A DNA stretch of 63,757 nt, counting the filler, from Octopus bimaculoides (lineage: Eukaryota), in assembly GCF_001194135.2 (NCBI RefSeq). It is 6 parts of 6 records of this genome, joined end to end, with 100 filler letters (N's around TTAATTAATTAA, not from the genome) between each part and the next. Parts side by side here need not be neighbours in the genome. Positions count along the whole stretch, not along the records: positions 1 to 25,550 come from NC_069002.1; 5 more parts are not named here. One strand, given 5' to 3'. Made by a program: the position numbers and the translations under genes. Below are positions 3,719-12,550 of this stretch, in pieces (position 1 is the first letter of the stretch; every line of letters starts with the position of its first letter). Under the pieces are notes generated by a model that saw only the letters and a list, made by a program, of their open reading frames with translations, made no database searches and was not told the origin of the DNA.

Positions 3719-4633
3719 NNNNNNNNNNNNNNNNNNNNNNNNNNNNNNNNNNNNNNNNNNNNNNNNNNNNNNNNNNNNNNNNNNNNNNNNNNNNNNNNNN
3801 NNNNNNNNNNNNNNNNNNNNNNNNNNNNNNNNNNNNNNNNNNNNNNNNNNNNNNNNNNNNNNNNNNNNNNNNNNNNNNNNNNNNNNNNNNNNNNNNNNNN
3901 NNNNNNNNNNNNNNNNNNNNNNNNNNNNNNNNNNNNNNNNNNNNNNNNNNNNNNNNNNNNNNNNNNNNNNNNNNNNNNNNNNNNNNNNNNNNNNNNNNNN
4001 NNNNNNNNNNNNNNNNNNNNNNNNNNNNNNNNNNNNNNNNNNNNNNNNNNNNNNNNNNNNNNNNNNNNNNNNNNNNNNNNNNNNNNNNNNNNNNNNNNNN
4101 NNNNNNNNNNNNNNNNNNNNNNNNNNNNNNNNNNNNNNNNNNNNNNNNNNNNNNNNNNNNNNNNNNNNNNNNNNNNNNNNNNNNNNNNNNNNNNNNNNNN
4201 NNNNNNNNNNNNNNNNNNNNNNNNNNNNNNNNNNNNNNNNNNNNNTATATATATATATATATTTTCCATACGTACATACATACATGCATTCAGACATACA
4301 ATTTTTAAAACATCTTTTATTTCTTAGTCAACAGAATATGGAACGTGTGAGGTGTGTGGAAACTAATAAAATCTCAACGCTTCTCTTCGCAATATTCTGG
4401 TGAGTGGAATAACAACACCTAGCCTCCTGTGGATATCATAATAAAGGAAGGAAATGGCTAATAGATAACAGATGTAGAAGCGAGTGTACGGGCGTTACGA
4501 TAATAAGAACATCCTTGCACCGACCAATAAATTCTGTAAGTTCGTTAAGAGCGAAACGTTAAGACGAATACTTTTAAAAGACTTTGTATCTGTTTGTGAA
4601 CCTGTCTATTTATCTGTCTTTCTATCGGTCGGT

Positions 4634-4815
<182 letters not shown>

Positions 4816-4932: not shown

Positions 4933-5142
<210 letters not shown>

Positions 5143-5145
5143 CAT

Positions 5146-5292
5146 TGAACCATCTTGTTTATGGATGACCTGAAATTGTTTGGGAAATCTGAAAAACAGA
5201 TAGATTCTTTAACCAAAACAGTCCAGAAGTCTGGTAGGGACATCGGTATGGAATTTGGAATTACCAAACGCCCAGTACTTAATATGAAAAGA
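5146..5292 (+). mobile_element. Non-LTR retrotransposon RT fragment with catalytic FMDD motif, R4/Dong-like
   Basis: Translates LFMDDLKLFGKSEKQIDSLTKTVQKSGRDIGMEFGITKR. This matches the pattern I recognise for R4/Dong-type RTs, NHLLFMDDLKLY..SE..LDSL..TV..FS.DIGMEFG..KC. Clade assignment is by motif recognition only. Confidence 0.85.
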
Positions 5293-5453
5293 GAGAAGAA
5301 AGCCTGCCCCTGCCACTTCCCCTACCCCAAGCTTTCAGTCATACTCTAACATCTCTTATCCTTCACTCTCCATAGGACTCTAGGTGTGTCTCGGCAAGTG
5401 ATTGTAACAAACATGCAGATTAAAAGTAAAATAATAACAATAATAATAATAAT

Positions 5454-5489
<36 letters not shown>

Positions 5490-5497
5490 TCTATAAT

Positions 5498-5682
5498 TAC
5501 AGGGCCTGAACTCTTGTGGGAAAGAGGTAAGTCGATTACATAGCCCCCACCCCAGTGCTCAAATGGTACCTTATTTTGTCGACCCCGAAAGGCTGAGTGG
5601 ACATCGAGGAATTTGGATTCAGAACATAAAGAGGACTACATGCCGCTAAGCATTATAACGATTCTGCCAGTTCGCCAACTTA
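5498..5682 (-). mobile_element. SINE group C copy
   Basis: gtcgattac...ggtaccttattttgtcgaccccgaaagg...ttcagaac...atgccgctaagcatt...ctgccagttcgcc, homologous to 36602-36822. Confidence 0.8.
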
Positions 5683-5700
5683 CATAAGAATAATAATAAT

Positions 5701-5848
5701 CCTTTCTACTAAAGATGCAAGGCCTGAAATTTTGTGGGAAGGAGACTAGTCGATTACATCGACCCTAGTACTTCACTGGTACTTATTTCACCGACCCCGA
5801 AAGAATGAAAGACAAAGTGAAGACGGACGAAATGCCGCTAAGCATTCC
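5701..5848 (-). mobile_element. SINE group C copy (tandem with the previous copy)
   Basis: caaggcctgaaattttg...gtcgattacatcgacc...ctggtacttattt...gaccccgaaag...gacggacgaaatgccgctaagcatt. Confidence 0.8.
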
Positions 5849-6184: not shown

Positions 6185-6282
<98 letters not shown>

Positions 6283-6318
6283 ACCACCACCACCACCACC
6301 ACCACAACCACAACCACT
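6185..6318. repeat. (AC)n-(ACC)n microsatellite
   Basis: Read directly. Confidence 0.97.
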
Positions 6319-6689
6319 ACCAAACAAGCGCGTACACAGGTATGTTTATTTGTTTTATATAGCTATAGGTGAACAATAGCGTTGATGTTTACAGCATAAT
6401 CGGTGTTTCAATGCATCTCTTGACTGGAAGAGGAAGTGCTGGTAACCCGATGTTCAACCAAGTAATACGATTCACAAGGCATATAATCCCTACAAGACAG
6501 GAAAAAAAACATACATTAAAAATGTATCAAGAAACAATTCCATAAAAACGAAGCAAAAATAATATAGTTAAACTGGCATGAAAATACAATAATGCACGGT
6601 CCTTAGAAACATGGACGTGGTGCACTTGGTAAAGCGGAAGAAACAGTCATGTAACTGTCAAATAATAATGAGGAATACCAGGCCCTGGC

Positions 6690-6960
6690 TTTCATGGCTT
6701 CTAACCTCAACTGATTGTACATGTTATCATGTACATTGTTTTGTCTTGTTATAAAAGATGGGCTACAGCAAGTATTCTGCTCAATACCACAGATTTGCTT
6801 GCCGATTGCTTGACCTTAGCTAGTTGAATATATCCCTTAGTGGCTGACGATATGTGCATCTCTGATCACGAGTAGAAGTAGTGGGAGAGGATCATAGCCA
6901 TATGTTGGGAGGAGATCTTTGGAATTTGAATAATTCACCTCTGAAAACATGGTCGTTTCG
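6690..6960 (-). repeat. Interspersed repeat of uncertain class (possibly a retroelement 3' region)
   Basis: The minus strand reads ggctatgatcctctcccactacttctactcgtgatcagagatgcacatatcgtcagccactaaggga..., which I recall as a common octopus repeat. It is single-copy in this window, so it is not independently confirmed here. Confidence 0.4.
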
Positions 6961-7233
6961 CTCAACATCCTTAAACATCCCTTATTCAGGGAGCTTTTGA
7001 GCGGAGCTATTGAGTGCAATGCACTGTCTTCACCTGTCCCTTCACTCGATTGCCGGTCTTTATGACATGGCAAATACTTACATATAGCCTGCCACAGTCA
7101 ATGGAGTGCACATTCTGTTACACATCGGCCAGAGTTTTCCCCGTTTTTCTTTTGAAAAATGTTTGGCGGGAAGCCCCCATCGATATTTTAAAACACAGAA
7201 GTAGATCACCTTCCTTCTCTCTCATTCTTCAAT

Positions 7234-7585
7234 TAGTTCGTTTGGCAAAGAGGCACTAGTCTTTGTGACGTTACTTGTCCATATATTTATAATTTCCTTT
7301 AGCTGACTCAAGTTGTGACGATCTGTTCATCTGCAATTTTTGTAAAGGATTAATTCGTCTGACAGAGAAACACTCTCTTTTTTGACATTGCTTGTCCATA
7401 TATTTATAATTTCCTTAAGCTGACTCACATCATGTTGCTCCTTTCCATCCGCATATTTTGTAAAGGAATAATTCATCGGGCAACGAAACGCTCTCCCTTG
7501 AGACTCTACTTGTCCATTTATTTACCGTTTTCATGAGCTGACTAAAATCGTATTGCTTCTTTTCATCCGAAACTTTTCTAAAAGA
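7234..7585 (-). repeat. Three diverged 118-bp tandem units, each readable as a 39-aa peptide (decayed coding-like repeat)
   Basis: Units start at 7585, 7467 and 7349 on the minus strand. Peptides: SFRKVSDEKKQYDFSQLMKTVNKWTSRVSRESVSLPDEL, SFTKYADGKEQHDVSQLKEIINIWTSNVKKESVSLSDEL, and SFTKIADEQxRHNLSQLKEIINIWTSNVTKTSASLPNEL (the third needs one 1-nt gap). Confidence 0.9.
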
Positions 7586-7980
7586 TGCAATGTTATTTTT
7601 AGCATTGCTATTCGTACTATTTTCCTTCTTCAAATTAATGTTTTCTTCACTAAGCTTTCATTGTTCAAATATAAGAGTATAAACTTGAAACTTTATCTTC
7701 GCTTATGATTTTCCCATTGCATTTGTTTTGTTTATTTTTTTCTTCTGTTTCAAAATAATTTTGGTGTGTGTTTGCATGCAGTAGTGAAGCCTACATCTAC
7801 AGTGGAGAACATTTCTTCCTGCCACATCTGAAGCCATTTTGACCCACGAATACGTAATACAAATACAAATGGATATTTGCCAAAATTTATATATGCAAGA
7901 ACTACACGTTCTTATTTATTTTCTAAAGTAAATTACATTTTCGGGGAATTCTGACACAGACATCCGTTCGCTTCAAAGAA

Positions 7981-8300
7981 CACAACAACAAACATAAAAG
8001 CAACAAATAACAACAACAACACTAACAACAACAACAACAACAACAGCAGTTGTAATAGCAGCAGCAAGAACAAGAACGAAGATATTGATGGTGAAGTTGA
8101 TGACGGTGATGATGGTAAGAAGAAGAGGAAGAAGAAGTAGAGGAAGAAGAAGAAGAAGAAGAAGAAGAAGAAGAAGAAGAAGAAGANNNNNNNNNNGAAG
8201 AAGAAGAAGAAGAAGAAGAAGAAGAAGAAGAAGAAGAAGAAGAAGAATGATATCCGTAGTAGTAGTTGTAGTAACAAAAATAACAATAATAATGATGATA
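7981..8300. repeat. Compound (AAC)n/(GAA)n/(AAT,GAT)n simple-repeat tract
   Basis: Read directly. Confidence 0.95.
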
Positions 8301-10982: not shown

Positions 10983-11170
10983 CAACAATTTTGAGGGATG
11001 GGCACAAGTCGATTGCATCGATCCCAGTACTTGACTGGTACTTCGTTATATCCACCCTGAAGGGATTACAGACCAAGCTGACCTCGGCTTGGAATTAAAC
11101 ACAGAACGTAAAAATGTCGGATGATATAGAGCTGATTCTTTTTGTCCAAGGTGCTAACAATTGTGCTAAC
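10983..11170 (-). mobile_element. SINE group C copy (diverged)
   Basis: aagtcgattgcatcgatcccagtacttgactggtactt...gacctcggc...cagaacgtaaa. Confidence 0.75.
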
Positions 11171-12408: not shown

Positions 12409-12550
12409 CAACAAATCGACTCACGAAGCTTCGGTCAGCCCGAGGCTATAGTAGAAGATACTTGCCCAAGGTACCACGCAGTGGGACTAAACCGGGGACC
12501 AAACCATGTGGGTGGGAAGCAAGCTTCTTGTCACACAGCCACGCCTGCGC
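12409..12550 (-). mobile_element. SINE group B, tRNA-related head (rest lost in the gap)
   Basis: The reverse complement gives gtggctgtgtgacaagaagcttgcttcccacc...ggtttagtcccactgcgtggtaccttgggcaagtatcttctactatagcctcgggc, homologous to 45241-45360. Confidence 0.85.

What the first reader, a model, noticed from the sequence alone, without database searches (positions are those of the whole stretch)
7234..7585. Protein-like 39-aa repeat encoded by 118-bp units, with a +1 register shift at both junctions
Seen: three tandem units on the minus strand. Unit 1 vs 2 differ at 31 of 117 positions; unit 2 vs 3 differ at about 26. Each unit reads as the same stop-free amphipathic peptide (core SQL..I.N.WTS.V..ES.SL.DEL). 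By my hand count 7 and 8 codons differ only synonymously, which is a modest enrichment and not decisive. The period is 118 nt rather than 117, so reading through either junction goes out of frame. Both junctions read GAA-TTA-(T/A)TC-CTT-TAC, where a CTT to TTT +1 slip (the slip used in bacterial prfB) would restore the frame. Unit 1 is entered in frame from an upstream open stretch (KLSEENINLKKENST...). Unit 3 has a 1-nt deletion, so this copy is probably dead. Hypotheses: (a) neutral old duplication of a pseudogene piece; (b) relic of a gene or element using programmed +1 frameshifts between repeats; (c) an array of separately captured paralogous cassettes. It sits directly upstream of a probable retroelement-derived repeat (6690-6960), so it could be a chimeric retrocopy. 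Hypothesis (a) has the highest prior.
Basis: partly seen in the sequence, partly recalled or inferred. Interest (0 to 1): 0.7.

Follow-up and report, generated by a model that had tools for sequence, protein, structure and literature searches.

The report
Decayed triplicated 118-base ORF fragment
A short protein-like stretch of octopus DNA was copied head to tail three times long ago, and because each copy is 118 bases (one more than a multiple of three) the reading frame shifts at every joint by arithmetic alone, with no evidence of a frameshifting gene.

Summary
There are three head-to-tail units on the minus strand: 7582-7465, 7464-7347 and 7346-7230. They are 118, 118 and 117 nt long and 68-76% identical. 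Each is stop-free in the same relative frame, both junctions read GAATTA(T/A)TCCTTTAC, and unit 3 has a 1-nt deletion.

The +1 register and the matching junctions follow automatically from tandem duplication of a 3n+1 segment. They are not independent evidence for programmed frameshifting. The site lacks a slow or stop codon after CUU-U and has no stimulatory RNA structure. The locus shows no start codon, splice signals, poly(A) signal or poly(A) tail.

No homologue was found in 1.84 billion representative proteins, in Pfam, or in viral or metagenome contigs.

The one point that is not trivial is a modest protein-like substitution pattern among the units. Omega is about 0.34 (calibrated P about 0.02-0.03), and amino-acid replacements are conservative (P about 0.003).

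Best reading: an old local triplication at the C-terminal end of a coding segment that is now dead. A copy of three mutually exclusive 118-nt exons with the introns lost is a minor rival. Interest is low unless other octopus genomes show the array conserved.

The parts
7583..7657 (-). Upstream open stretch of 25 codons (KLSEENINLKKENSTNSNAKNNIAS), in frame with unit 1 and bounded upstream by TGA at 7658-7660.
   Evidence: Translations; stop-to-stop interval 7433-7657 is 75 codons.
7465..7582 (-). Unit 1 (118 nt): FRKVSDEKKQYDFSQLMKTVNKWTSRVSRESVSLPDELF plus 1 nt. It is the only unit reachable in frame from upstream and the only one with a significantly amphipathic 18-mer.
7460..7474 (-). Junction 1, GAA TTA TTC CTT TAC. 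Unit 1's frame runs on as LYKICGWKGAT and ends at TGA 7432-7430.
7347..7464 (-). Unit 2 (118 nt): FTKYADGKEQHDVSQLKEIINIWTSNVKKESVSLSDELI plus 1 nt, in the +1 frame relative to unit 1.
7342..7356 (-). Junction 2, GAA TTA ATC CTT TAC. Unit 2's frame runs on as LYKNCR and ends at TGA 7329-7327.
7230..7346 (-). Unit 3 (117 nt), with a 1-nt deletion between 7323 and 7322. Its core, RHNLSQLKEIINIWTSNVTKTSASLPNELI, is followed by EE and TGA (7224-7222).
7222..7229 (-). The 8 nt after the array (AAGAATGA). Joined to the spare 118th base of a unit, they give (Q/E)-E-stop, so before duplication the open frame ended two codons after the unit.
   Evidence: Direct reading; this is inference about the state before duplication.

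Best explanation
This is a dead relic. A segment of about 118 nt lay at the very C-terminal end of an open reading frame (25 or more upstream codons, then the 39-codon unit, then two codons and a stop). It was duplicated in tandem at the DNA level to three copies, probably in two steps, since u2 and u3 are closer to each other than to u1. Because 118 = 3x39+1, each copy lies +1 relative to the one before, and every junction is the same end-to-start join. A ribosome entering from upstream would read unit 1, then 11 out-of-frame codons, then stop, so units 2 and 3 would lie in untranslated sequence. A duplication at the extreme C-terminus changes only the last two residues. The host gene could therefore have stayed functional for a while, which would explain part of the protein-like substitution signal. 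Today nothing marks the locus as an expressed gene, and unit 3 carries an indel.

Shown: the repeat, its period, the frames, the junctions, the stops, and the absence of homologues and signals. Inferred: that the ancestral segment was coding, and the order of events.
For: - The array is exactly three units with unique flanks and no other copy in the window.
- The junctions are identical by construction.
- The 0-frame stops lie 10 and 6 codons after the junctions, and the natural stop lies two codons after unit 3.
- Only the sense frame of the six shows more synonymous changes than expected (14 against 9.1, P=0.05), no new stops (P=0.06) and conservative replacements (mean BLOSUM62 +0.26, P=0.003).
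- A codon model on a star tree gives omega 0.34-0.36. The chi-square LRT gives P=0.008-0.013. Calibrated against 400 neutral, stop-free simulations, P is about 0.02-0.03; the null median omega is 0.77.
- The locus looks dead. There is no Pfam domain in six frames of 6300-8100. No predicted protein in the 5.8-billion and 1.84-billion libraries matches the units or any neighbouring ORF, although those libraries hold Octopus vulgaris proteins. The sense strand at 7800-7150 has no AG preceded by a pyrimidine tract. There is no AATAAA/ATTAAA between 7522 and 6350 and no A-run of at least 7 downstream.
- The surroundings are repeat-rich and full of assembly gaps, with decayed LINE reverse-transcriptase fragments.
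Against: - If units 2 and 3 became untranslated at once, their own branches should look neutral. Yet they carry 9 synonymous of 21 changed codons, and u3's replacements are conservative (P=0.025). The numbers are small.
- Differences by codon position are nearly flat (17:12:20 on the star tree), so any constraint was weak or brief.
- With no homologue, the claim that the segment ever coded rests only on substitution statistics from 39 codons in three sequences, in a region picked out because it looked peptide-like.
Confidence: 0.55

Rival explanations
1. It never coded. An A-rich non-coding 118-nt segment was triplicated as a minisatellite-like tandem repeat. One of six frames happened to be open, and the protein-like substitution pattern is chance combined with ascertainment, because the reader selected it for looking like a peptide.
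For: - An open frame is expected by chance: P=0.34 for any of six frames in a shuffled 117-mer, and 72 intervals of 75 codons or more occur in the window.
- All three units stay stop-free with P=0.06 under neutrality.
- Differences by codon position are flat, 17:12:20.
- No homologue was found anywhere and no Pfam family.
- There are no gene signals.
- The window is full of tandem repeats.
Against: - Given that the units are stop-free, synonymous excess has P=0.065 and conservative replacements have P=0.002. The joint tail is 1.75e-5 before correction.
- Calibrated omega has P of about 0.02.
- None of the other five frames shows anything similar.
- The frame is continuous with 25 upstream codons and ends two codons after the array.
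Confidence: 0.22
2. It is an intron-less copy (a retrocopy, or the result of intron loss) of a transcript that included three tandemly duplicated, normally mutually exclusive 118-nt exons. The units diverged under selection in the parent gene, where only one is used per mRNA. Joined together they are out of frame, which is the known way that 3n+1 or 3n+2 exclusive exons are policed by nonsense-mediated decay.
For: - The units are of equal length, not a multiple of three, related at the protein level, and have omega below 1 on the whole tree.
- The constraint signal is not confined to u1.
- Clusters of mutually exclusive exons arise by tandem exon duplication, and isoforms with two or more such exons acquire premature stops (PMC6071210).
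- LINE reverse-transcriptase fragments lie in the same window.
- A weak A-rich patch (CAAAAGAAAAACGGGGAAAAC) lies about 75 nt after the stop.
Against: - No parent protein was found, although a 39-residue match at 50-60% identity would fall below threshold in a library of 1.8 billion.
- There is no real poly(A) tail or poly(A) signal.
- The upstream frame is open for only 25 codons.
- Triple inclusion followed by retroposition is a rare chain of events, and I know of no described case. A local DNA duplication explains the identical junctions more simply.
Confidence: 0.1
3. It is, or recently was, a translated gene that displays one unit per protein or joins the units. This could work by programmed +1 frameshifting at CUU-U at each junction, or by alternative splice or start sites so that each isoform ends shortly after a single unit.
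For: - CUU-U allows Leu-tRNA to re-pair in the +1 frame, as in prfB and Ty1 (established knowledge), and a +1 shift there restores the unit frame at both junctions.
- Omega is below 1 and replacements are conservative.
- An ATG lies four codons before unit 2 in its frame, giving the ORF 7327-7476.
Against: - There is no stop or obviously slow codon after CUU; the codon is UAC.
- There is no RNA structure: z-scores run from -0.1 to +1.5 on both strands, and there are no Rfam hits.
- The two junctions are copies of one event, so they are not independent.
- Unit 3 has a frame-breaking deletion and no start codon of its own.
- The sense strand has no candidate 3' splice site with a pyrimidine tract and only one GTGAG.
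- There is a stop 25 codons upstream and no upstream coding signal.
- No annotated or predicted protein matches.
Confidence: 0.04

Closest known systems
Ordinary DNA-level tandem duplication or minisatellite within or next to a decayed coding sequence
   Same: Head-to-tail copies with no spacer, identical junctions, a whole number of units between unique flanks, 24-32% divergence, and one indel.
   Different: The units keep one open frame and show a modest protein-like substitution pattern, with omega about 0.34. Purely neutral repeats should not show this.
Programmed +1 ribosomal frameshift sites (bacterial prfB CUU-UGA-C, yeast Ty1 CUU-AGG-C, metazoan antizyme UCC-UGA-U)
   Same: A CUU-U tetranucleotide at the point where a +1 shift would restore the downstream frame.
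   Different: There is no stop or rare codon in the A site, no stimulatory element and no intact gene. Conservation cannot be assessed, and the repeated site is explained by the duplication itself.
Clusters of mutually exclusive exons made by tandem exon duplication (reviewed in PMC6071210)
   Same: Units of equal length, not divisible by three, encoding variant versions of the same peptide. Joining two or more produces premature stops.
   Different: Here the units abut with no introns, no parent gene is known, and there are no hallmarks of a retrocopy.
Processed pseudogene (LINE-mediated retrocopy)
   Same: An intron-less, decayed ORF fragment in a region that also holds LINE reverse-transcriptase debris.
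   Different: No poly(A) tail, no poly(A) signal, and no identifiable parent.

Membership tests
Programmed +1 ribosomal frameshift site | A P-site codon whose tRNA can re-pair in the +1 frame | tested here: met
   CUU-U is present at both junctions (7474-7460 and 7356-7342). It carries little information and was duplicated along with the unit.
Programmed +1 ribosomal frameshift site | A slowly decoded 0-frame A-site codon (a stop or rare codon) directly after the slip codon | tested here: not met
   The next codon is UAC (Tyr). The first 0-frame stops come 10 codons (7432-7430) and 6 codons (7329-7327) later. Codon rarity in octopus was not measured.
Programmed +1 ribosomal frameshift site | A nearby stimulatory RNA element | tested here: not met
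   The units fold no better than shuffles, with z from -0.1 to +1.5. There was no Rfam match.
Programmed +1 ribosomal frameshift site | Intact, expressed ORFs on both sides, with the site conserved in homologues | tested here: not met
   There is a stop 25 codons upstream and a 1-nt deletion in unit 3. There are no gene signals. No homologues exist to compare. Expression cannot be tested with these tools.
Mutually exclusive exon cluster, seen as an intron-less copy | Homologous units of equal length with a conserved frame, length not divisible by three | tested here: met
   118, 118 and 117 nt, with the same relative frame.
Mutually exclusive exon cluster, seen as an intron-less copy | Units diverged under purifying selection | tested here: inconclusive
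   Omega is 0.34 with calibrated P of about 0.02-0.03. Replacements are conservative, P=0.003. Differences by codon position are flat.
Mutually exclusive exon cluster, seen as an intron-less copy | A parent gene with these exons separated by introns | not testable with these tools
   No cephalopod genome can be searched by similarity here. Protein libraries gave no parent, but sensitivity for 39 residues is low.
Processed pseudogene / retrocopy | A 3' poly(A) tract, with a poly(A) signal upstream of it | tested here: not met
   No AATAAA/ATTAAA between 7522 and 6350, and no A-run of 7 or more downstream. There is only an interrupted A-rich 21-mer.
DNA-level tandem duplication | Contiguous head-to-tail copies with identical junctions between unique flanks | tested here: met

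The most novel reading that the evidence does not exclude
The three 39-residue units are, or until recently were, selected and translated cassettes of an unannotated octopus gene. They would be read either by +1 ribosomal frameshifting at CUU-U at each 118-nt junction, or by a scheme that uses one unit per isoform, with the 3n+1 period ending translation just after the chosen unit.
Probability: 0.04. Interest if true: 0.7.

Novelty: new member of a known kind. Interest (0 to 1): 0.18.

Why it matters
As it stands it matters little: it is one more decayed tandem duplication in a repeat-rich octopus region. It does offer a caution for genome scans. Any tandem repeat whose unit is 3n+1 or 3n+2 long and carries an open frame will look like a series of conserved frameshift sites, so the junctions cannot be counted as independent evidence. 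It would become interesting only if other octopus genomes or transcriptomes showed the period, the junction and the frames conserved under selection. In that case it would be a rare metazoan candidate for repeated +1 frameshifting, or for a new way of making alternative C-termini.

Tried and rejected
1. Homologue searches all came back empty. These were the word-index search with the frame-corrected 144-residue concatenate; a profile of the three units against 1.84 billion representatives, whose four hits are repetitive junk sharing only an INxWTS-like motif summed over repeats; exact look-up of the 67-residue and 49-residue ORFs; all ORF pieces from 6369-7928; and viral and metagenome contigs.
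2. Pfam gave ZSWIM1-3_C at 17.7 bits, E=0.003. I rejected it as noise. It is below the cutoff, matches 13 residues, and did not recur in the six-frame scan, where unrelated hits reach 18 bits.
3. I tested whether the units are a tandem miRNA, snoRNA or other structured-RNA cluster. No unit folds better than shuffles on either strand, and there are no Rfam or tRNA hits.
4. I tested whether unit 3's deletion is a compensating mutation that puts the u2 and u3 cores into one ORF. It is not. The intervening TGA (7329-7327) is ancestral: u1 has TGA, u2 has TGG and u3 has TGA at the homologous place.
5. I looked for a fourth, degenerate unit or dispersed copies. There are none in the window or in the O. 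vulgaris locus L001.
6. I tried to reach the orthologous O. vulgaris locus through the reverse-transcriptase hit P0006. L001 shares only repeat fragments with the window, so it is a paralogous LINE copy.
7. I looked for in-place exon use. There are no plausible 3' splice sites on the A-rich sense strand.
8. Nei-Gojobori dN/dS of 0.18-0.36 overstates the constraint. Against a relocation null, omega is about 0.55 in effect, and the neutral, stop-free null itself has a median ML omega of 0.77.

Full report
**1. The observation**

On the minus strand there are three contiguous units: u1 7582-7465 (118 nt), u2 7464-7347 (118 nt) and u3 7346-7230 (117 nt).
- TRF reports period 118, 2.6 copies and 75% matches.
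- Self-BLAST gives 7232-7467 against 7349-7585 at 75% identity, E=1.6e-39.
- An nhmmer profile of the units finds exactly these three and nothing else in the window.
- Pairwise mismatches are 31/118, 28/117 and 37/117.
- Each unit is stop-free in the same relative frame.
- Both junctions read GAA TTA (T/A)TC CTT TAC.
- u1 is entered in frame from 25 open codons that follow a TGA.
- u3 has a 1-nt gap between 7323 and 7322.

The synonymous-only codon counts are 6, 9 and 5. u2/u3 differ at 28 positions, not about 26. Only u1 is significantly amphipathic.

**2. What is trivial and what is not**

An open 39-codon frame is not remarkable in this A-rich sequence. A shuffled 117-mer has at least one of six frames open with P=0.34, and the window holds 72 stop-to-stop intervals of 75 codons or more.

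The 118-nt period and the two identical junctions are what any tandem duplication of one 3n+1 segment produces. Each junction is simply unit end joined to unit start, so the two CTT-T sites are one site copied, not two independent observations.

Reading through gives LYKICGWKGAT-stop after u1 (TGA 7432-7430) and LYKNCR-stop after u2 (TGA 7329-7327). After u3 the frame ends with EE-stop (7224-7222). Before duplication, then, the open frame ended two codons after the unit. The duplicated piece sat at the C-terminal end of an ORF.

**3. The non-trivial part: how the units differ**

I reconstructed a majority ancestor on a star tree, with 22, 9 and 18 changes on the u1, u2 and u3 branches. I then moved each observed change to random sites holding the same base.
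- In the sense frame, synonymous-only codon changes number 14 against 9.1 expected (P=0.05).
- All units stay stop-free with P=0.06.
- The mean BLOSUM62 score of replacements is +0.26 (P=0.002-0.003).
- The joint tail is 1.75e-5.
- None of the other five frames shows anything comparable.

A GY94-type codon model gives omega of 0.34-0.36, and the LRT against omega=1 gives P=0.008-0.013. I calibrated this on 400 neutral relocation data sets conditioned on being stop-free. The null median omega is 0.77, and the observed value has an empirical P of about 0.02-0.03.

Two things weaken the signal. Differences by codon position are almost flat, 17:12:20. The region was also chosen because it looked like a peptide. 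My reading is that a protein-like signal is present and suggestive (overall about 1e-3), but it rests on 39 codons in three sequences.

**4. Searches for relatives and for function**
- No protein homologue was found by word-index search with the frame-corrected concatenate.
- The three-unit profile against 1.84 billion representatives gave only four hits. All are repetitive sequences matching a short INxWTS-like motif many times.
- Pfam gave only sub-threshold noise.
- Exact look-ups of the two ORFs, a search with every ORF piece in 6369-7928, and scans of viral and metagenome contigs were all empty.
- These libraries do contain octopus proteins. A reverse-transcriptase fragment at 16119-16436 is 85% identical to an Octopus vulgaris protein, and its DNA is 90% identical over 134 nt to O. 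vulgaris chromosome OX597814.1. The window therefore comes from an octopus or a close relative. That locus is a paralogous LINE copy, so no orthologous comparison was possible.
- A 39-residue match at 50-60% identity would fall below the significance threshold in libraries this large, so a diverged parent gene is not excluded.

**5. Gene and RNA signals at the locus**
- The units fold no better than shuffles on either strand (z from -0.1 to +1.5).
- Rfam and ARAGORN find nothing.
- On the sense strand between 7800 and 7150, no AG is preceded by a pyrimidine-rich tract, and there is only one GTGAG.
- There is no AATAAA/ATTAAA between 7522 and 6350, and no A-run of 7 or more downstream of the array.
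- The supposed retroelement repeat at 6690-6960 has no Pfam hit, no homologue, no second copy in the window and no tRNA-like head. Nothing ties the array to a retrocopy.

**6. Interpretation**

The best-supported account (confidence about 0.55) is an old local triplication of the last roughly 118 nt of a coding segment. The host ORF may have tolerated it for a time, because only its last two residues changed. It has since decayed.

The rivals are as follows.
- A repeat that never coded, with the substitution signal arising by chance (0.22).
- An intron-less copy of three mutually exclusive 118-nt exons (0.10). This would neatly explain selection on all units together with a 3n+1 length (background in PMC6071210). 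It lacks a parent gene and a poly(A) tail, and it needs a rare chain of events.
- A translated gene using +1 frameshifting or one unit per isoform (0.04). Of the defining features of +1 sites, only the slippery CUU-U is met. A slow or stop A-site codon, a stimulatory element and an intact gene are not.

The idea that u3's deletion compensates the frame is rejected, because the intervening TGA is ancestral.

**7. Verdict**

The repeat is real and was described accurately. The mechanism that made it look exciting is an arithmetic by-product of the unit length. The residual puzzle is a modest signature of purifying selection among the units. That could be settled quickly by comparing octopus genomes and transcriptomes, which these tools cannot reach. 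Interest is low (0.18).

Noticed in passing
window 16119-16436 (+) and 5149-5346 (+): Two decayed fragments of LINE-type reverse transcriptase. The first is 85% identical in protein to an Octopus vulgaris RT-domain protein (P0006) and 90% identical in DNA over 134 nt to OX597814.1. The second holds the F-M-D-D motif region, with Pfam RVT_1 at 17.3 bits (below threshold), and hundreds of RT proteins match the combined query at E of about 1e-20. These hits identify the source as an octopus or a close relative.
   Followed up: partly
window 14571-14750 vs 21618-21439: An inverted pair of 180-bp interspersed repeats, 84% identical, about 6.7 kb apart. They look like SINE- or MITE-type elements, but no family could be assigned.
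   Followed up: no
window 5470-5591, 5684-5803, 10987-11077, 20345-20438, 21268-21359: A dispersed family of short repeats (about 90-125 bp, 70-77% identity) occurs several times in the window.
   Followed up: no
window 16987-17155 and 12412-12478; L001 12993-13162: Another interspersed repeat is shared between the window (two places) and the unrelated O. vulgaris locus, at 75-84% identity.
   Followed up: no
window 1-25550: The piece is a draft-quality assembly. It has 12 runs of N (10-747 nt) and very dense microsatellites, for example (TC)91 at 4633-4815, (AAT)62 at 4957-5142, (AC)48 at 6186-6281 and (AAG)44 at 8117-8247. No ORF of 90 residues or more lies outside simple repeats or gaps.
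   Followed up: partly
window 7465-7582 (-): Unit 1 is the only unit a ribosome could reach in frame from upstream, and it is also the only one with a significantly amphipathic 18-residue segment (FSQLMKTVNKWTSRVSRE, hydrophobic moment 0.68, P=0.002). This fits, but does not prove, the idea that u1 stayed the translated copy after the duplication.
   Followed up: partly
window 7476-7327 (-): Read in the +1 frame, the D-E-L-F codons of unit 1's tail supply an ATG four codons before unit 2. This creates a free-standing 49-residue ORF (MNYS + unit 2 + LYKNCR). The homologous place before unit 3 reads ACG AAT TAA, so it has no start and an immediate stop.
   Followed up: partly
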